From IMG/VR virus record IMGVR_UViG_3300005613_000001, positions 62,001-126,000 of that record: DNA of 64,000 nucleotides, one strand, 5' to 3'. The position numbers and the translations under genes were made by a program. Numbering within the stretch: position 1 is the first letter of the stretch; the number at the start of each line of letters is the position of its first letter. The notes under the pieces are model-generated. The model was not told the DNA's origin and did no database searches. It saw only the letters and a program-made list of their open reading frames with translations. Below are positions 2,719 through 57,023 of the stretch, piece by piece.

Positions 2719-3052
2719 ACAAGTTGGTAGACGTAGCTCTGTTTAACCGCCGTTGATAATGTATCAAAGCTAACGCCTTGGCTTCAGTATAAGTCACCAA
2801 ATCATCTTCATTCCACACAGAATTAAATGTATCCCAATAAATGGGATGTACAAGACCATGTGGAGAATTATGTTTTACAGTTTTTAATTTCTTAATAACT
2901 ACTTTTTCAAATTTGCCTTCTCCAAGCGCCTTTTGTCGTGAATACAGTATATCACCCGGTTGATAATCAACGGTAAAATTATAACTATTATCTACTATAC
3001 TGCATCCTCCTGATTCAGCACCCCCCGCAGGAGTTTCAATATATTCCGCCAT
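2705..3052 (-). CDS. hypothetical protein
   Basis: 115 aa ORF with GGAGG SD, operonic. Confidence 0.7.
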   Translation of the reverse strand: MAEYIETPAGGAESGGCSIVDNSYNFTVDYQPGDILYSRQKALGEGKFEKVVIKKLKTVKHNSPHGLVHPIYWDTFNSVWNEDDLVTYTEAKALALIHYQRRLNRATSTNLCASE

Positions 3053-3325
3053 TTAACCTCCAAGCGCCTCTATTTTTTCTTCTATACAAGCGATTTCTTC
3101 TGCCATATTTGCTTTTTTATCAACTCTCATTTCGGAAGCAGAATATAAATATTTCTCTTCCACCAGATCATCTAAGCCTATATCGTAGTAATTCTTTCCA
3201 AACATATGCATGAAAGATTCTACGATATGATTTTCATATGTGGGAGTATGTTTGCAGCATCCTCCGTGTTCTTCAGCGACATAAACTGTTTCGCCAACTG
3301 TGTATTTAAATTGTATTGAAGGCAT
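3053..3325 (-). CDS. hypothetical protein (putative late gene)
   Basis: preceded by CTATATAGAGT-ATG. Confidence 0.7.
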   Translation of the reverse strand: MPSIQFKYTVGETVYVAEEHGGCCKHTPTYENHIVESFMHMFGKNYYDIGLDDLVEEKYLYSASEMRVDKKANMAEEIACIEEKIEALGG

Positions 3326-3406
3326 ACTCTATATAGTGGACTTTAAAGTAACCTTCTGTAGCGTTAATCGCCATTTTGTTTCACACCATTGGCGATTACA
3401 ACCACA

Positions 3407-3826
3407 TTAATTCTGACTCCGAAAAGTAAAAGTAGGAGTGATTTTAAGAACATCTGTGTCTGTCATTACTCTCGCAGCAGCAAACCGTTCTGTCCAAAGG
3501 ACTTTCAGTGATGTTACACCTAAAACATAATAACCATAAACAGTATTGCCCGTTGATCCACATGTCCAACTTAATTCCGAGGCGTATTGTGTTTCTGCTT
3601 CATTACTAACATTTAAAGAGGCGGCACCAAAATTTGCTCTAGTTAATGTTTTTGAAACATAATTTGTAAAATCTGCTTCGCTGAAATCGGCAGATGTAGT
3701 GTTTCCTTCCGGGGTATAATCATTTTGAAATAATTTTAAAACATAATTTTCATCCGTATCTAACGCATCTTTTAGCATTTTATCTAAAAGTTCAAGCTCG
3801 CCTTCATTTGGAACTATAATCGACAT
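3407..3826 (-). CDS. putative virion structural protein
   Basis: T/S-rich beta-type sequence (LKLFQNDYTP...EADFTNY...YGYYV...ERF) resembling phage tail/baseplate-associated proteins. Confidence 0.55.
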   Translation of the reverse strand: MSIIVPNEGELELLDKMLKDALDTDENYVLKLFQNDYTPEGNTTSADFSEADFTNYVSKTLTRANFGAASLNVSNEAETQYASELSWTCGSTGNTVYGYYVLGVTSLKVLWTERFAAARVMTDTDVLKITPTFTFRSQN

Positions 3827-10040: not shown

Positions 10041-11439
10041 ACATTCTCACAATTCTTGGATCAAATCTAGCCACAATTTGAACTAAATCATTTTGTGAAG
10101 CCATAACATTGTGGATGTTCTTATACGCCCCAGGAACTTCATCTGCGGCGGCGGAAAGAACTTTAACACCCTTCTTTTCCAAATCCTTCTGAACTGCTCT
10201 CCACGTATATTTATCTTTTGCCTTCTTACGAGACATTTGACGACCGGCTCCATGAGATGCTGAATACAGACTTTCAGCATTACCCTTACCTTGCACGATA
10301 AATGCAGGGGTAGCCATTGAACCGGGAATCACACCCCATACGCCAGGACCAGCAGGGGTAGCACCTTTACGATGCACAATAACATCACCCTGCTCCAAAT
10401 CGTGTAACTCTTTCCACGCAAAGTTATGGTGGTTCTCCACGCCCCAAATAATTTTGGAGCCAAGCAACTTAGAAACACCCTTATGGATTACATCGTGGTT
10501 GGCAGCAGCGAATCTTCCCATAAGTTCCATCGCTGCCCAATATTCTTGTCCTTCTTCTGTGTCAAGATCAAGCCAAGCAAGCCTTCCAAGATCTTTATAT
10601 TTTGCCGGTAGTTTAGCCTGCGCAATGCCGCTGTACTGGTTGCAGACAGCAGCACCGGGGCCTCTTGAGCCGGAATGGGTCATAAGGGCCACATAACTTC
10701 CCGCCTCAAGATTGCCTGGATGTCGAACGTGGGCATCACCATCATGAGTTATATCTTCGGCTATTGTTACAATGCCAAACTCCGCGAAGTGATTACCACT
10801 ACCGGAAGTTCCAAGTTGCTTCCAAGCCTTATCCTTCTGGTCTTCTGTTACTTTAGTTACAGACCAATCCTCATCCATAACAGGGTGATTCTTCGGCTGA
10901 TCGTATACGGCGTTCCCTTTGACACCAATACCAAACCGAGTGCCCCCTTCAAGGGATTCTTTGCATAAATTAAATTTAGAATCCAGTGCTTCAACAGGAA
11001 TATCCAACACTGAAAACTTCATTCTACATGCAATATCTACACCCACAGCAAATGGGCAGACTGCATTTTTTAGAGCCAACACACCACCAATGGGAAGTCC
11101 ATATCCCAAGTGTGCATCTGGCATAAGCGCACCGCTAACCGCATTCGGCAAGCTACAGGCTTGTTTCATTTGAGCATGAGAGCCTTCATCAATGTCTGTC
11201 CCGAAAGTTTTATATTCAACGGGTTCAGAGCGCACAAACTCCCTATCCTCAATGATTGACTTAGCCAAATCACCGTAGTAACGATCTGTAGTGTATGTCT
11301 CAGGGCTTTCTACTAAAGCTGTAAGAACACTTTTAACTTTTCTAATATCATGTTCACGTTTTGCTGTCTGGATGCAGACAATAGCATCCTTCACGCAATC
11401 TTCTGGAACACCTGCTTTTATTAATTGTCTTGAATTCAT
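10012..11439 (-). CDS. rtcB: RtcB family RNA ligase
   Basis: MPDAHLGYGLPIGG, GVDIAC, GSGNHF, HSGSRG, NHHN, HRKGA, SHGAGR, DEVPGAYK. Confidence 0.96.
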   Translation of the reverse strand: MNSRQLIKAGVPEDCVKDAIVCIQTAKREHDIRKVKSVLTALVESPETYTTDRYYGDLAKSIIEDREFVRSEPVEYKTFGTDIDEGSHAQMKQACSLPNAVSGALMPDAHLGYGLPIGGVLALKNAVCPFAVGVDIACRMKFSVLDIPVEALDSKFNLCKESLEGGTRFGIGVKGNAVYDQPKNHPVMDEDWSVTKVTEDQKDKAWKQLGTSGSGNHFAEFGIVTIAEDITHDGDAHVRHPGNLEAGSYVALMTHSGSRGPGAAVCNQYSGIAQAKLPAKYKDLGRLAWLDLDTEEGQEYWAAMELMGRFAAANHDVIHKGVSKLLGSKIIWGVENHHNFAWKELHDLEQGDVIVHRKGATPAGPGVWGVIPGSMATPAFIVQGKGNAESLYSASHGAGRQMSRKKAKDKYTWRAVQKDLEKKGVKVLSAAADEVPGAYKNIHNVMASQNDLVQIVARFDPRIVRMCGDGSKAED

Positions 11440-37541: not shown

Positions 37542-38198
37542 ATGAAGACATGTTCAAAATGCAATTTAACTAAAGACGAAACGCTATTTTCTAAGAACTC
37601 TTCCACTAAAGACGGGTTGTACGCATGGTGTAAGGCGTGTGCGAAGGAATACCGGAAAACTGAATATAAAAAAAACAAGGCTCAACACAAAGCAAGAAAC
37701 CGCAAGTGGCGAGAAGAAAATGTTGAACATAATAAGGCTCGCAATCAAAAGTGGTTGAAAGAAAACGCCGAACACCGTAAAGTATATAAAAAGGAATATC
37801 GCAAAAAAAACCAAGAATCAATTAATGCTTATAAGCGGGAGAAATACCAACGAGACATGCAAAATCCTTACTTCAGGCTCAAGGAGTGTCTTCGTAATCG
37901 CCTCCGTAAATACATAAAACGAAAAGGAAACACCCAACGATCTAAAGACTTAACCGGATGCACCATTGAAGAACTTGTACTCCATCTTGAATCAAAATTT
38001 ATGGAAGGAATGACATGGGACAACTATGGGAAGTGGCACGTTGACCATATCATTCCTATTTCCAGCTTCAATCTCACACTAGAAACCGAAGTTGAAAAAT
38101 GTTTCCATTTTACCAATCTTCAACCTTTGTGGGCAAAAGATAATTTAAAAAAAGGCAATCTTATTCAGGATGAACTAACGAAAACTCACCCTTCATAA
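37542..38198 (+). CDS. HNH homing endonuclease
   Basis: CSKC...CKAC, GMTWDNYGKWHVDHIIP...HFTNLQPLW..DN..K; antisense to neighbours. Confidence 0.9.
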   Translation: MKTCSKCNLTKDETLFSKNSSTKDGLYAWCKACAKEYRKTEYKKNKAQHKARNRKWREENVEHNKARNQKWLKENAEHRKVYKKEYRKKNQESINAYKREKYQRDMQNPYFRLKECLRNRLRKYIKRKGNTQRSKDLTGCTIEELVLHLESKFMEGMTWDNYGKWHVDHIIPISSFNLTLETEVEKCFHFTNLQPLWAKDNLKKGNLIQDELTKTHPS

Positions 38199-38954
38199 CC
38201 CTTTTTATGTTCTTAGTCTTAACACCAAAACGATGATCTACACACCTTGATTCCATAAAATTGTAGGTGCGAATTTTATCGCCTCGGTTACCACTTCCAA
38301 CTAAAAACCTACGTAACCTGCTGTACTTCTCATCCGACTTAGACCTGTAGTGATCCTGCACTTTGGCTGTTAGGACTTTTAATGCAGTACGACGATTGGT
38401 ATGTTGATCTCTACCGTTTATGAAAACAGACAGTTTAGTAGGCAAATGTTTCATCCTAACTGCGCTGTCCGTCTTGTTTTGGTGTTGACCACCTTTACCG
38501 TGACCCCCTTGTGTGGTCACTTCTAAATCAGACTCTTTTAAAACAAGCCCATTTTGCTTGTGAATAGGCAGGATTGCTACCTTAATATAGGAAGTCTGCT
38601 TTCTGCCTTTGGATTCGGTTGGTGGGATTCTTTGGCAACAATGCTGCCCACCTTCATACTGAAAAGCCCTACCTGCGCCTTTGCCGAAAAACCTAACGGT
38701 AACATGCCCGTTAGTGCTTTCTAACAATTCGCTCTTGAGGTTAAGGGTTTTCGCATATTTAAGGTATGCAGCAAGCAATTCATCAACAAAGATTTTGGAG
38801 TCTTCACCGCCTTCGCCAAATTGAATCTCTACAACTACTTCATTGGTAGTCTTAAGAAATTCTTTGTAATCATCTAATTCTTGGCTAAAGGCACCCCCTG
38901 TTCTTCAATGCTGCATTGCTAAAGACACCCCCTATTCTTTTTTTTCTCTTTCAT
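38161..38954 (-). CDS. RF1-like class I peptide chain release factor lacking domain 1, predicted to need two +1 frameshifts (about 263 aa)
   Basis: GGQ (GKGGQHQNKTDSAVR), RF1-type PxT (QRIPPTE), EIQFGEGGED, KIRTYNF; AAGGAG-N7-ATG at 38954; segments 38954-38922, 38920-38888 and 38886-38161. Confidence 0.85.
38884..38899 (-). promoter_or_regulatory. programmed +1 frameshift cassette 2 (prfB-type, UAG)
   Basis: AGG GGG TGC CTT TAG C in the +1 frame of cassette 1; its own +1 frame is the RF ORF. Confidence 0.85.
38918..38933 (-). promoter_or_regulatory. programmed +1 frameshift cassette 1 (prfB-type, UAG)
   Basis: AGG GGG TGT CTT TAG C in frame with ATG 38954. Confidence 0.85.
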
Positions 38955-39357
38955 CTTTCATCTCCTTTAGATGGTTCATAAGTCTAGGCACCAAATCGGC
39001 TGCCATTTTCTTTATTGTATCATATTCTATGTAGGGTTGAATAGCCCCGGAATACTCCAAAACATTGACATTTACCTCTTTTGGGGGGAAGTAAGTATCC
39101 CCCAACCACGATCCCTCTTCCCTCTCATGATCTAGTTCGTGTTCCAAGAACTGTACAATTTCAAAACAATTTGCATCATCTTTAGGAACGAACCAATTAA
39201 TATAGCCCGGCAATGAATGTTCTTTGTGGGCTGTCGGCAAACCCGGTTGGTAATGGAACATCGTATAGGTTCCCCACCGGAAAATAATCTCCTGGTGGAG
39301 TGACCACAACTTCATCAAAAAACCAGATATTAAGTCGTCGCCGTTCATTTTATTCAT
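38932..39357 (-). CDS. hypothetical protein
   Basis: 141 aa ORF overlapping the RF start. Confidence 0.7.
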   Translation of the reverse strand: MNKMNGDDLISGFLMKLWSLHQEIIFRWGTYTMFHYQPGLPTAHKEHSLPGYINWFVPKDDANCFEIVQFLEHELDHEREEGSWLGDTYFPPKEVNVNVLEYSGAIQPYIEYDTIKKMAADLVPRLMNHLKEMKDEREKKE

Positions 39358-39659: not shown

Positions 39660-39809
39660 ATGAGCAAGGAAAACAAAGATAAAGATATGCTGGTGCGAGT
39701 TCAGCCCACGCTCTTTGAGAAATTCAAGGAGAAGTGCGAAGCAAACTACAAGAGCATCAGCGAAGTCATCCGAGACTTCATGCAACAATACATCAAAGAG
39801 GACAAGTGA
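39660..39809 (+). CDS. ribbon-helix-helix protein (absent from ORF track)
   Basis: MSKENKDKDMLVRVQPTLFEKFKEKCEANYKSISEVIRDFMQQYIKEDK; GTGA overlap with tnpB. Confidence 0.8.
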   Translation: MSKENKDKDMLVRVQPTLFEKFKEKCEANYKSISEVIRDFMQQYIKEDK

Positions 39810-41017
39810 AACATCTATATTCTTACAAGTTCAGTCTGAAACCAACAGCACAACAAGAAGTCTTGCTTAACAAGCACTTCGGTTGTGTAAGATGGGTCTA
39901 TAACCATTTTTTGAATGAACGCATGGAAGAATACAAAGCAAACAAGCGAAGCCTCAAACGAAGTGATAACGAGAAAGAACTGCCAACGCTCAAGCAAGAA
40001 TATACTTGGTTGAAAGAAGTAGGCAGTCAATCACTGCAATACTCGGTCGAATGTTTGCAGAACGCATACAACAATTTCTTTCGCAAGTGCAAGCAGAAAG
40101 CCAAAGGCAAGAAAGGTTTTCCTCGTTTCAAGAAGCGGCATGGTAAGCAGTCCTTCAAGGTTAAGCAGAATATCCACTTAGTTGAAGGCAAGTTGATGTT
40201 TCCTAAGTTCTTGGACGGAATTGCTATTGTTCAACATCGTGAAGTAGAAGGCGAAATCCAGTTTGCTACTATCAGTAAGAACAAGGCAGGACAATACTAT
40301 GTGAGCATTACTGTTTCCAGAGAGATGCCGCAACTTAGTCCTACTGACAAAATGGTTGGCATTGACTTGAATGTAAAAGCAAACGTGGATAGTGATGGCA
40401 ACGCCGAGCCTAATCCAAGACCTGCAAAAGAATACCGAGCAAGATTGAAACTTCTCCATCAAAGAGTGAGCCGCAAAGAAAAAGGTGGAAAGAATAGAAG
40501 TAAGGCTAAGAGACAGTTAGCCAAGTTATACTTGAAAGTAACGAACAAGCGTGAAGACCATTTGCACAAACTATCGAAACGTATGATTGACGAAAACCAA
40601 GTCATTGTATGTGAAGACCTAAGTGTGGAGTCCATGCTTGCTAAAGTAAGTCCTGATGAACGCAAAGAAACTAGACATAAAGAGAAGAAACGTCATCAGG
40701 ATATACAGGATTGTGGTTGGTCAAGTTTCCTCAACAAACTCAAGTATAAGGCTGAGTGGTATGGACGAGAGTTCATCCAAGTGAGCCGATGGTTTCCAAG
40801 TTCTCAGTTGTGTAATCATTGTAGTTGGCGTTATCACGACTTGCCAAAAGATTGCAAGGAATGGACATGCTGGAATTGTTGGGAGTATAATGACCGTGAC
40901 CACAACTCAGCGAAAAACATCCTTGAAGAAGGATTGAGAATAAGAACCTCTGGAACAGAGGGAATAGCCTATCGCCCTGATATAAGACCCGCTATGAGTG
41001 GGCTATTGGTTGGATAG
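39806..41017 (+). CDS. tnpB: RNA-guided endonuclease TnpB
   Basis: HFGCVRWVYN, RuvC GIDLN / CEDL / DRDHN, CNHC..CWNC zinc finger. Confidence 0.95.
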   Translation: MKHLYSYKFSLKPTAQQEVLLNKHFGCVRWVYNHFLNERMEEYKANKRSLKRSDNEKELPTLKQEYTWLKEVGSQSLQYSVECLQNAYNNFFRKCKQKAKGKKGFPRFKKRHGKQSFKVKQNIHLVEGKLMFPKFLDGIAIVQHREVEGEIQFATISKNKAGQYYVSITVSREMPQLSPTDKMVGIDLNVKANVDSDGNAEPNPRPAKEYRARLKLLHQRVSRKEKGGKNRSKAKRQLAKLYLKVTNKREDHLHKLSKRMIDENQVIVCEDLSVESMLAKVSPDERKETRHKEKKRHQDIQDCGWSSFLNKLKYKAEWYGREFIQVSRWFPSSQLCNHCSWRYHDLPKDCKEWTCWNCWEYNDRDHNSAKNILEEGLRIRTSGTEGIAYRPDIRPAMSGLLVG

Positions 41018-56924: not shown

Positions 56925-56940
56925 AATTCTCCTAAATTAG

Positions 56941-57023
56941 TGGAGGCGAGGGGATTCGAACCCCTATCTCACAAGATCTCCCGAAGGTTTTAACGTGTGG
57001 CTCTCCCGTTGAGCTACGCCCCC
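56941..57023 (-). ncRNA. tRNA-like RNA with Ala-type G3:U70 acceptor and expanded anticodon loop
   Basis: GGGGGCG/CGCCTCC-A acceptor, GCTC/GAGC D-stem, AGGGG-TTCGAAT-CCCCT T-arm, 18-nt anticodon loop. Confidence 0.75.

What the first reader, a model, noticed from the sequence alone, without database searches (positions are those of the whole stretch)
38161..38886. Domain-1-less RF1 in a phage that uses the standard code
Seen: about 263 aa with PPT and GGQ intact but without the N-terminal helical domain. Intact genes end in TAG (csrA 20112, tnpB 41017, parB-like 15942), so the genome is not recoded. Established: phage RFs are mostly reported in stop-recoded phages, and domain 1 contacts RF3/L11. 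Inference: a backup terminator or rescue factor against host RF1 inactivation or amber suppression, possibly RF3-independent.
Basis: partly seen in the sequence, partly recalled or inferred. Interest (0 to 1): 0.6.

Follow-up and report, generated by a model that had tools for sequence, protein, structure and literature searches.

The report
Frameshift-gated minimal RF1 of a huge phage
A 527-kb phage encodes a release factor 1 without its N-terminal domain, and the gene can only be translated through two consecutive prfB-style +1 frameshifts at UAG, a self-limiting control so far described only for RF2.

Summary
On the minus strand, 38161-38886 encodes RF1 domains 2-4. PPT and GGQ are intact. 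NCBIfam scores are RF1 224 bits, RF2 146, PrfH 66. The AF2 model overlays ribosome-bound RF1 at TM 0.90.

This frame has no usable start codon. Translation must begin at ATG 38954 and pass two tandem +1 frameshift cassettes, each AGGGGG-N3-CUU-UAG-C. That is the E. coli prfB site with the RF1-specific UAG in place of UGA. The product is 11+11+241 = 263 aa.

- The cassette occurs three times in 527 kb (0.12 expected).
- A 94%-identical relative keeps both sites across a 3-nt indel.
- 33 of 41 unique homologous loci carry one or two such sites (binomial p about 1e-44). Many of these loci lie on contigs over 100 kb.

The genome uses all three stop codons. It encodes no RF3, and its RtcB lies 27 kb away.

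Best reading: an on-demand, probably RF3-independent UAA/UAG terminator, made only when cellular UAG termination is slow. The literature I searched reports frameshift control for prfB but not prfA, and never with TAG. The closest viral precedent is Mimivirus eRF1. Nothing here has been tested experimentally.

The parts
38962..38967 (-). Shine-Dalgarno AAGGAG, 7 nt upstream of the leader ATG
   Evidence: Sequence read. Homologous leaders also start at an ATG preceded by AAGGAG or GGAGG.
38922..38954 (-). Leader segment 1: ATG plus 10 codons (MKEKKKNRGCL), ending in the slippery CUU. It overlaps the 3' end of the upstream 141-aa ORF in another frame.
   Evidence: In frame with CTT TAG. Close relative L154 has an equivalent leader.
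38918..38933 (-). +1 frameshift cassette 1: AGGGGG (38933-38928), TGT, CTT (38924-38922), TAG (38921-38919), C
   Evidence: Aligned with the E. coli prfB site AGGGGG TAT CTT TGA C. The motif occurs 3 times in 527 kb against 0.12 expected.
38888..38920 (-). Segment 2, read after the first shift: AGC...CTT, 11 codons (SNAALKNRGCL)
   Evidence: A 3-nt indel relative to L154 preserves the frame relation between the two sites.
38884..38899 (-). +1 frameshift cassette 2: AGGGGG (38899-38894), TGC, CTT (38890-38888), TAG (38887-38885), C. It is a near-exact direct repeat of cassette 1, 34 nt downstream.
38164..38886 (-). RF body, 241 codons: RF1 domains 2, 3 and 4
   Evidence: Pfam PCRF + RF-1. NCBIfam RF1 224 bits. 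PDB RF1 152 bits. AF2 pLDDT 94.6, TM 0.90 to ribosome-bound T. thermophilus RF1.
38800..38817 (-). GEGGED, the conserved GxGGxE/D element at the start of domain 2. A start at TTG 38778 would delete it.
   Evidence: Invariant G30, G32, G33 and D35 in the family alignment. Sequence.
38617..38625 (-). PPT tripeptide (the RF1-type PxT 'anticodon') within QRIPPTESKGRKQTS
   Evidence: Q, T-E, G-R and T-S are conserved as in RF1.
38485..38493 (-). GGQ catalytic motif
   Evidence: Invariant in 52 homologs.
38161..38163 (-). Stop codon TAA of the RF gene. It lies inside the convergent 218-aa ORF 37542-38198 (+).
38932..39357 (-). Upstream 141-aa ORF with no Pfam match. Its TAG stop (38934-38932) is embedded in cassette 1, and the RF leader ATG lies 20 nt before that stop, so translational coupling is possible.

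Best explanation
The gene encodes a minimal class-I release factor of RF1 type, with codon-recognition domains 2/4 and the GGQ domain 3 but no domain 1. It most likely terminates translation at UAA and UAG on host ribosomes without needing RF3.

Its mRNA cannot be read straight through. Ribosomes start at ATG 38954 and after 11 codons meet CUU-UAG-C, preceded by an internal Shine-Dalgarno-like AGGGGG 3 nt upstream. Two outcomes are possible:
- If RF1 activity (host RF1 plus this protein) is ample, the UAG is recognised and an 11-aa peptide is released.
- If UAG recognition is slow, peptidyl-tRNA-Leu slips from CUU to UUU (+1).

Eleven codons later an almost identical second cassette repeats the test. 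Only ribosomes that shift twice make the 263-aa factor. Output should therefore fall roughly with the square of RF1 sufficiency, giving a steep negative feedback that keeps the phage factor off unless termination at UAG is failing.

Shown: the gene anatomy, the RF1-type sequence and fold, the two cassettes, and their conservation.
Inferred: that frameshifting occurs, that RF1 activity controls it, the UAA/UAG specificity, and RF3-independence.
For: Protein identity:
- RF1 model 224 bits, RF2 146, PrfH 66, ArfB 25.
- PDB sequence search: RF1 136-152 bits, RF2 about 94, PrfH 40.
- AF2 model pLDDT 94.6. Its best Foldseek hits are ribosome-bound RF1, at TM 0.90 and rmsd 1.4 A over 231 columns.
- In the tree the short family is monophyletic (98*) and falls on the RF1 side of the RF2 split.

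Need for recoding:
- The RF frame has no start codon before conserved domain 2.
- A leader ATG with an SD is in frame with CTT TAG, and each +1 shift leads into the next segment.

Site quality:
- Both cassettes match the E. coli prfB site element for element: AGGGGG, 3-nt spacer, CTT, stop, C. The elements are described in PMC12421855.
- The motif is found 3 times in 527 kb against 0.12 expected.
- UAG-C is an uncommon context at real stops, 13 of 90 TAG stops.

Conservation:
- 33 of 41 unique homologous loci have one (22) or two (11) CUU-stop sites in the required frame. The background expectation is 0.027 per locus, giving a binomial tail of 2e-44.
- After the shift the site reads F-D/E/S/R/N, with Ser only as AGY and Arg only as AGA. 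The constraint is therefore on nucleotides.
- Relative L154 (94% aa identity) keeps both sites. A 3-nt indel between them preserves the frames while the leader peptide diverges.

Support for activity without domain 1: PMC1586002, summarising Mora et al. 2003, states that deleting domain 1 leaves codon specificity and in vitro release intact but abolishes RF3 stimulation. The phage encodes no translational GTPase or RRF.
Against: - There is no experimental, transcript or peptide evidence.
- The host is unknown, so use of the internal SD cannot be checked.
- Across the family, 17 of 44 sites use UGA, which a PxT-type factor should not read. One gene (L003) has both UAG and UGA. Self-regulation therefore cannot be the whole story for the family.
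- Many single-site homologs lack an SD-like element.
- Codon specificity rests on motif conservation only.
- Tree support for the RF1-side placement is 86 SH-aLRT, which is not starred. PrfH and ArfB sit on very long branches.
Confidence: 0.72

Rival explanations
1. The RF works as described, but the frameshift sites sense the host's termination capacity in general rather than the phage factor's own activity. Alternatively, the phage factor has broadened (omnipotent) stop-codon specificity, so any stop codon can serve in the cassette.
For: Family sites use TAG 24, TGA 17 and TAA 3. L003 combines TAG and TGA in one gene. The near-identical proteins of L022 and L024 differ in site codon, TAA versus TAG. 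Site stop type shows no link to GC content. In prfB, where autoregulation is accepted, the stop is TGA in 98.6% of motifs and never TAG (PMC12421855).
Against: In this window both sites are UAG, the one codon an RF1-type factor reads exclusively. The decoding elements (Q-R-x-P-x-T-E, G-R, T-S) are RF1-like and nearly invariant. Under the tripeptide rule, which I state from memory, Pro at the first position restricts the second base to A.
Confidence: 0.12
2. It is part of a genetic-code-switch module like those of stop-recoded phages. It would boost termination at UAA/UAG while another stop codon is suppressed late in infection.
For: RF1 is reported in TGA-recoded Jade phages next to a suppressor tRNA and TrpRS (bioRxiv 10.1101/2021.08.26.457843). 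The genome has a tRNA(UUA) and a weak tRNA-like(CUA) call. Three family-1 loci and a second short-RF1 family carry in-frame TGA.
Against: This genome uses all three stops. Treating any one stop as sense does not lengthen its large genes. It has no tRNA(UCA). The suppressor-like tRNAs read UAA/UAG, the codons this factor should terminate at, and they lie about 66 kb away.
Confidence: 0.07
3. It is a PrfH- or ArfB-like rescue factor that releases peptides from damaged or non-stop ribosomes rather than at stop codons.
For: Like PrfH it lacks domain 1. An RtcB gene exists in the same window (10048-11172).
Against: PrfH model 66 bits against a cut-off of 166.65, and ArfB 25 bits against 100. PDB PrfH scores 40 bits against 152 for RF1. 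It retains the RF1 PxT loop that PrfH has replaced. RtcB is 27 kb away, not in an operon. It does not group with PrfH or ArfB in the tree. It has no ArfB-type basic C-terminal tail.
Confidence: 0.05
4. The interruptions are damage or error: a decaying pseudogene, an assembly artefact, or a shorter protein started at TTG 38778 or a non-canonical codon.
For: A naive ORF call gives a 205-aa protein from TTG 38778. Gene callers in public data mis-start most homologs.
Against: The same two sites occur in an independent metagenome contig, with a frame-preserving indel. 33 of 41 loci keep such sites, with leader ATG plus SD. The body is under strong conservation, with 34 invariant columns in 52 sequences. 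A TTG 38778 start would remove the invariant GxGGxD element.
Confidence: 0.03

Closest known systems
Autoregulatory +1 programmed frameshift of bacterial prfB (RF2)
   Same: Same cassette architecture: SD-like AGGGGG, 3-nt spacer, slippery CUU, in-frame stop followed by C, and a short leader of about 10-25 codons before the shift. The logic is the same: a release-factor gene gated by a stop codon.
   Different: The protein is RF1-type, not RF2. The stop is UAG, whereas no TAG was found among 8,164 prfB motifs, and PMC12421855 states that the mechanism is not known for prfA. There are two cassettes in tandem. The shift lies before domain 2 because domain 1 is absent. Across the family all three stops occur.
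Mimivirus R726 / Megavirus mg280 class-I release factor (PMC3521657)
   Same: A virus-encoded release factor whose translation needs two recoding events. One is a frameshift at CUU UAG C (Mimivirus) or CUU UAA C (Megavirus). It was interpreted as stronger buffering of expression.
   Different: Those are eukaryotic/archaeal eRF1 homologs in viruses of amoebae. They combine one readthrough with one frameshift and are full-length. This is a bacterial-type RF1 in a phage, with two +1 shifts and a domain deletion.
PrfH (RFH), partner of RtcB2
   Same: A bacterial-type RF that lacks domain 1 and keeps GGQ. It is about 200-260 aa.
   Different: PrfH has a remodelled decoding loop and sits directly downstream of rtcB (L129). 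This protein keeps PxT and scores far below the PrfH cut-off. Its genome's RtcB is 27 kb away.
Engineered domain-1-deleted E. coli RF1 (Mora et al. 2003, as summarised in PMC1586002)
   Same: Same domain content (2-3-4). It is reported to retain codon specificity and peptide release, and to function in vivo, without RF3 stimulation.
   Different: That is a laboratory truncation. This is a natural, diversified family that also lacks about 20 C-terminal residues.
RF1/RF2 genes noted in huge and stop-recoded phages (PMC7162821; bioRxiv 10.1101/2021.08.26.457843)
   Same: Phage-encoded class-I release factors. RF1 is reported in huge phages and in TGA-recoded Jade phages.
   Different: The passages I retrieved by term search in those papers do not mention loss of domain 1 or a frameshift-gated gene structure. 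This genome is not recoded.

Membership tests
RF1 (prfA; NCBIfam NF001859 / TIGR00019) | PxT decoding tripeptide with flanking Q-R-x-P-x-T-E...G-R..T-S | tested here: met
   QRIPPTESKGRKQTS. T, E, G, R, T and S are invariant in the family.
RF1 (prfA; NCBIfam NF001859 / TIGR00019) | GGQ peptidyl-hydrolase motif in an RF-1 domain | tested here: met
   PF00472 83 bits against a cut-off of 35. GGQ at 38485-38493.
RF1 (prfA; NCBIfam NF001859 / TIGR00019) | Full-length equivalog score, including N-terminal domain 1 | tested here: not met
   224 bits against a cut-off of 400. Only model positions 103-332 of 347 are matched. It is therefore an RF1-derived family, not an equivalog of prfA.
RF1 (prfA; NCBIfam NF001859 / TIGR00019) | Closer to RF1 than to RF2, PrfH or ArfB by sequence, fold and tree | tested here: met
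RF1 (prfA; NCBIfam NF001859 / TIGR00019) | UAA/UAG-dependent peptide release | not testable with these tools
   Needs a biochemical assay.
prfB-type autoregulatory +1 frameshift site | SD-like element 3 nt upstream of CUU, with an in-frame stop followed by C | tested here: met
   Present twice. Aligned with E. coli prfB.
prfB-type autoregulatory +1 frameshift site | The +1 frame continues into the conserved protein, and the zero frame has a start codon with SD | tested here: met
prfB-type autoregulatory +1 frameshift site | Site conserved among homologs beyond chance | tested here: met
   33 of 41 loci, p about 2e-44. L154 shows a compensating indel.
prfB-type autoregulatory +1 frameshift site | The stop codon in the site is cognate to the encoded factor | tested here: met
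   Both sites are UAG and the factor is PxT-type. For the family as a whole the result is inconclusive, because 17 of 44 sites are UGA.
prfB-type autoregulatory +1 frameshift site | Frameshifting occurs and responds to RF concentration | not testable with these tools
   Needs a reporter or in vitro translation.
RF2 (prfB; TIGR00020) | SPF tripeptide and best score to the RF2 model | tested here: not met
   PPT, not SPF. RF2 scores 146 bits against 224 for RF1. The RF2 clade is separate.
PrfH (TIGR03072) | Model score above cut-off, and a remodelled decoding loop | tested here: not met
   66 bits against 166.65. PDB PrfH 40 bits.
PrfH (TIGR03072) | Operon with rtcB immediately upstream | tested here: not met
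   The upstream gene is a 141-aa ORF without a Pfam match. RtcB lies at window 10048-11172.
ArfB (NF006718) | GGQ domain alone plus a basic C-terminal tail, about 140 aa | tested here: not met
   25 bits against a cut-off of 100, matched over residues 117-152 only. The protein has a full decoding domain.

The most novel reading that the evidence does not exclude
Huge phages carry a diversified family of minimal, RF3-independent RF1s whose synthesis is gated by stop codons. The gates are single or tandem +1 frameshifts at UAG, UGA or UAA, or in-frame UGA. This would be the first frameshift-autoregulated RF1. The tandem UAG cassettes would act as an ultrasensitive sensor that switches on phage-made termination capacity only when host RF1 is depleted, inactivated or outcompeted. 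That could include competition from the phage's own tRNA(UUA) and tRNA-like(CUA), giving the phage a tunable termination and readthrough state.
Probability: 0.4. Interest if true: 0.9.

Novelty: new variant of a known kind. Interest (0 to 1): 0.8.

Why it matters
Programmed +1 frameshifting in prfB is the textbook case of translational autoregulation. A 2025 survey of 12,753 genomes concluded that it is not used for RF1 and never uses TAG. This phage family shows the same device on an RF1-type gene, with the RF1-specific codon, and duplicated in tandem. It gives a natural test of whether the stop codon in the site sets the feedback specificity, and whether two sites sharpen the response.

It also shows that nature has repeatedly settled on a domain-1-less RF1, which bears on what domain 1 and RF3 are needed for.

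On the practical side, public gene calls for this family are systematically wrong: starts are misplaced and proteins truncated. Phage annotation pipelines therefore miss these genes. The compact cassette of about 70 nt could serve as an RF1-activity sensor for synthetic biology and genetic-code-expansion work.

Tried and rejected
1. In-frame readthrough. My first idea was readthrough of the in-frame ATG-CAG-CAT-TGA at 38916-38905. I rejected it because that TGA is part of TTG-AAG (Leu-Lys) in leader segment 2, and the same pattern in L006 and L008 is explained by the frameshift chain.

2. Genome-wide recoding of TGA, TAG or TAA. Rejected: all three are used as stops, standard-code ORFs cover 91% of the genome, and the large genes do not lengthen.

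3. The third genomic copy of the motif, at genome position 301303 (+). It lies between two minus-strand genes with no plus-strand ORF, so I took it as chance.

4. PrfH reference sequences. A search of 151 genomes of one class found none above the cut-off. That sample included the unpublished genome G044, and no claim here rests on it. I took PrfH from an E. coli RefSeq genome instead.

6. Site stop codon against GC content or the decoding motif. No relation was seen.

7. Sigma-70 promoter and terminator scan around the gene. Nothing exceeded the shuffled controls.

8. Literature. Seven full-text searches and term look-ups in ten papers found no description of a domain-1-less phage RF1 or of a frameshift in an RF1-type gene. 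The library is open-access only, so a prior report elsewhere cannot be excluded.
Full report
**Setting.** The window is bases 62001-126000 of a 527,112-bp IMG/VR virus record that CheckV rates as complete. The genome is 41% GC. ARAGORN finds 59 tRNA genes in it. It therefore belongs to the huge phages.

**The genetic code is standard.**
- Stop-to-stop ORFs of at least 100 aa cover 91% of the genome under table 11.
- Treating TGA, TAG or TAA as sense does not lengthen the large genes.
- A non-overlapping set of 499 long ORFs ends in TAA 262, TGA 147 and TAG 90.

**The protein.** On the minus strand an open frame runs from 38904 to the TAA at 38163-38161.
- It matches Pfam PCRF positions 99-194 of 194 and RF-1 positions 5-116 of 116.
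- NCBIfam scores are RF1 224 bits (model positions 103-332 of 347), RF2 146, PrfH 66 and ArfB 25.
- Against PDB sequences, RF1 scores 136-152 bits, RF2 about 94 and PrfH 40. The alignment ends near E. coli RF1 residue 339 of 360.
- An AlphaFold2 model built on 52 homologs has mean pLDDT 94.6. It superposes on ribosome-bound T. thermophilus RF1 at TM 0.90 and rmsd 1.4 A over 231 columns. Closed crystal forms give TM about 0.52.
- The decoding loop reads QRIPPTESKGRKQTS and GGQ is intact.

**The start problem and its solution.** The RF frame has no ATG, GTG or TTG until TTG 38778. That codon lies downstream of the invariant GEGGED element of domain 2. Public gene calls for the closest homologs also begin at odd places, and several carry an N-terminal 'VSLA' peptide. 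Lining up the upstream DNA of 33 IMG/VR homologs explained both observations. A CTT-T(AG/GA/AA) motif sits at a nearly fixed distance before the GxGG motif. 'VSLA' is that motif read in the wrong frame.

In the window the chain is as follows:
- SD AAGGAG (38967-38962).
- ATG 38954, then ten codons ending in CTT 38924-38922, then TAG 38921-38919.
- After a +1 slip, AGC 38920 and ten further codons ending in CTT 38890-38888, then TAG 38887-38885.
- After a second +1 slip, AGC 38886 and the 241-codon body.

The product is 263 aa.

Each cassette is AGGGGG, three bases, CTT, TAG, C. Aligned with E. coli prfB taken from RefSeq (AGGGGG TAT CTT TGA C), the elements coincide one for one. The two cassettes form a 22-nt direct repeat with two differences, 34 nt apart.

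**Is it more than chance or error?**
- AGGGGG-N3-CTTT-stop occurs three times in 527 kb, both strands counted, against 0.12 expected. Two copies are these. The third lies between two minus-strand genes with no ORF on its strand.
- An independent metagenome contig encodes a 94%-identical protein (L154). It has the same two sites, with AGGAGG in place of AGGGGG. A 3-nt deletion between them keeps the frame relation, while the leader peptide itself diverges. This argues for selection on the recoding cassettes and against assembly error.
- Among 41 unique loci of the family (IMG/VR contigs, many of 100-570 kb, plus MAG-binned contigs), 22 have one such site and 11 have two. In each case the site lies in the frame that leads into the body. 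Most are preceded by a leader ATG with an SD.
- The same pattern inside the bodies occurs at 0.0009 per codon. The binomial tail for 33 of 41 is 2e-44.
- In the RF frame the site reads Phe followed by Asp, Glu, Ser, Arg or Asn. Ser appears only as AGY and Arg only as AGA. The constraint is therefore on nucleotides, not amino acids.
- The base after the stop is C in 33 of 44 sites. The preceding codon is UGU in 25 and UGG in 8.
- In this genome C is the rarest base after genuine stops.

**Family and relatives.**
- A search of 5.8 billion proteins returned 120 best hits that are all 172-300 aa. Many lie on contigs of 100-660 kb.
- An exhaustive profile search of 50%-identity representatives put about 25 short clusters ahead of the first full-length RF1.
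- A 92-row maximum-likelihood tree gives the short family as one clade (SH-aLRT 98). Cellular RF1 (88) and RF2 (85) form separate clades. The short family falls on the RF1 side of the RF2 split (86). E. coli PrfH and ArfB-like proteins sit on very long branches outside it.
- The genome's only RF-1-domain gene is this one. It has no translational GTPase, so no RF3. It has no RRF and no PrmC above the cut-off.
- Its RtcB is at window 10048-11172, 27 kb away. The immediate neighbours are listed under the other observations below.

**Mechanism.** For prfB, the accepted model is that slow recognition of the in-frame stop lets the SD-like element and the CUU-U slippery sequence drive a +1 shift, so that RF2 limits its own synthesis (PMC12421855). 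Every sequence element of that model is present here, twice. The stop is the one codon that only RF1-type factors read.

I therefore infer that total UAG-termination capacity (host RF1 plus this factor) sets the yield. Two sites in series should make the yield depend roughly on the square of the per-site efficiency. The result would be a low basal level and a steep response.

Published work summarised in PMC1586002 reports that deleting domain 1 leaves codon specificity and peptide release intact and abolishes RF3 stimulation. This makes a functional, RF3-independent terminator plausible.

The likely biological role is to keep UAA and UAG termination going during a long infection when host RF1 is running down or is targeted. 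These two codons end about 70% of the phage's genes. That last step is inference.

**What does not fit neatly.**
- Across the family the site stop is TAG 24 times, TGA 17 and TAA 3.
- One gene (L003) has TAG and then TGA.
- Near-identical proteins differ in site codon, TAA against TAG (L022, L024).
- There is no link to GC content or to the decoding motif.
- A PxT-type factor should not read UGA. Those sites would then sense host RF2, or specificity is broader than the motifs suggest.

For the window itself, with two UAGs, self-regulation is the simplest reading.

**Literature.**
- Al-Shayeb et al. list RF1 and RF2 among huge-phage genes.
- Neither these nor two later phage papers nor Burroughs and Aravind's survey of release factors mention a domain-1-less phage RF1 or a frameshift in it, in the passages my term searches returned.
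- The 2025 prfB survey states that the frameshift is shown for prfB but not prfA, and that none of 8,164 motifs uses TAG.
- The nearest precedent is the Mimivirus and Megavirus eRF1 homolog. It needs a readthrough plus a frameshift at CUU UAG C.

Within the open-access library I searched, this appears to be undescribed.

**Other observations.**
- A second family of short phage RF1s (L036-L081, about 218 aa) starts at an ATG directly at domain 2. In 44 of 46 loci it carries an in-frame TGA after Gly, where cellular RF1 has Trp. Those loci are not obviously TGA-recoded.
- Three family-1 loci (L013, L018, L019) have an in-frame TGA in a short leader instead of a frameshift. Stop-codon gating of phage RF1 genes therefore seems general.
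- The genome also carries a tRNA(UUA) and an adjacent weak tRNA-like call with CUA.
- Ten of the 16 homologous contigs found in species-representative genomes are binned with Planctomycetota. This may hint at the hosts or may only reflect binning.
- The gene's neighbours are a Band_7/SPFH protein, an unassigned 218-aa ORF with an HNH-like motif that overlaps the RF 3' end, a 141-aa ORF, and an RHH-TnpB element.

**Limits.**
- No reads, transcripts or peptides could be examined.
- The host is unknown.
- Frameshifting, codon specificity and RF3-independence are inferred.
- sampled one unpublished genome (G044), and nothing reported here depends on it.

**Verdict.** The feature is a new variant of a known kind and is of high interest.

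Noticed in passing
L036-L081 (IMG/VR loci), e.g. L037 about 2995-3654: A second family of domain-1-less phage RF1s of about 218 aa, with decoding loop PPTERKGRVHTS. It starts at an ATG directly at domain 2. In 44 of 46 loci it has an in-frame TGA after Gly, at the position where cellular RF1 has a conserved Trp. The flanking ORFs do not clearly indicate TGA recoding.
   Followed up: partly
L013, L018, L019 (IMG/VR loci), about 60 nt upstream of position 3001: Three family-1 genes have no CUU-stop site. Instead a short ATG or GTG leader is followed by an in-frame TGA in the same frame as the RF body. Expression would need UGA readthrough or suppression.
   Followed up: no
L083:766-926 (-), which is genome 167265-167425, outside the window: Two adjacent suppressor-like tRNA calls in a standard-code phage. 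The tRNA(UUA) scores 53 bits in Rfam but has A at position 33. The 86-nt tRNA-like call with CUA scores 32 bits and has a 20-nt insertion in the anticodon arm, possibly an intron.
   Followed up: partly
window 10048-11172 (-): An RtcB RNA ligase gene (PF01139, 280 bits). It is 27 kb from the RF gene and not in an operon with it.
   Followed up: partly
window 37542-38198 (+) and 39660-41017 (+): The RF gene is flanked by likely mobile elements. A 218-aa ORF with an HNH-like motif and no Pfam hit overlaps the RF 3' end by 38 nt in convergent orientation. On the other side lie a weak RHH ORF and a TnpB (OrfB_IS605, HTH and TNB domains).
   Followed up: partly
window 56940-57023 (-), and genome 158908-158994 (-): ARAGORN reports two tRNA-like genes with four-base anticodons (aaac and aaag) of unassigned identity.
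   Followed up: no
L082:1803-1820 (+), which is genome 301303: The third and only other copy of AGGGGG-N3-CTTTAGC in the genome. It lies between two minus-strand genes with no plus-strand ORF, and is probably chance.
   Followed up: yes
L084-L099 (genome contigs): Ten of the 16 family-1 homologs found in species-representative genomes sit in MAGs labelled Pirellulaceae or other Planctomycetota, on contigs up to 176 kb. The two nearest to the window's protein (L084, L086) are among them. This may be a host hint or may reflect mis-binned phage contigs.
   Followed up: no
P0122 (477 aa) and P0130 (481 aa): Two high-scoring representatives are twice the family length and match the profile in two stretches. 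They may be tandem or fused short RFs, or merged gene calls.
   Followed up: no
window 38932-38954 (-): The RF leader ATG lies 20 nt before the TAG stop of the upstream 141-aa ORF. That TAG is embedded in the first AGGGGG element, an arrangement compatible with translational coupling.
   Followed up: no
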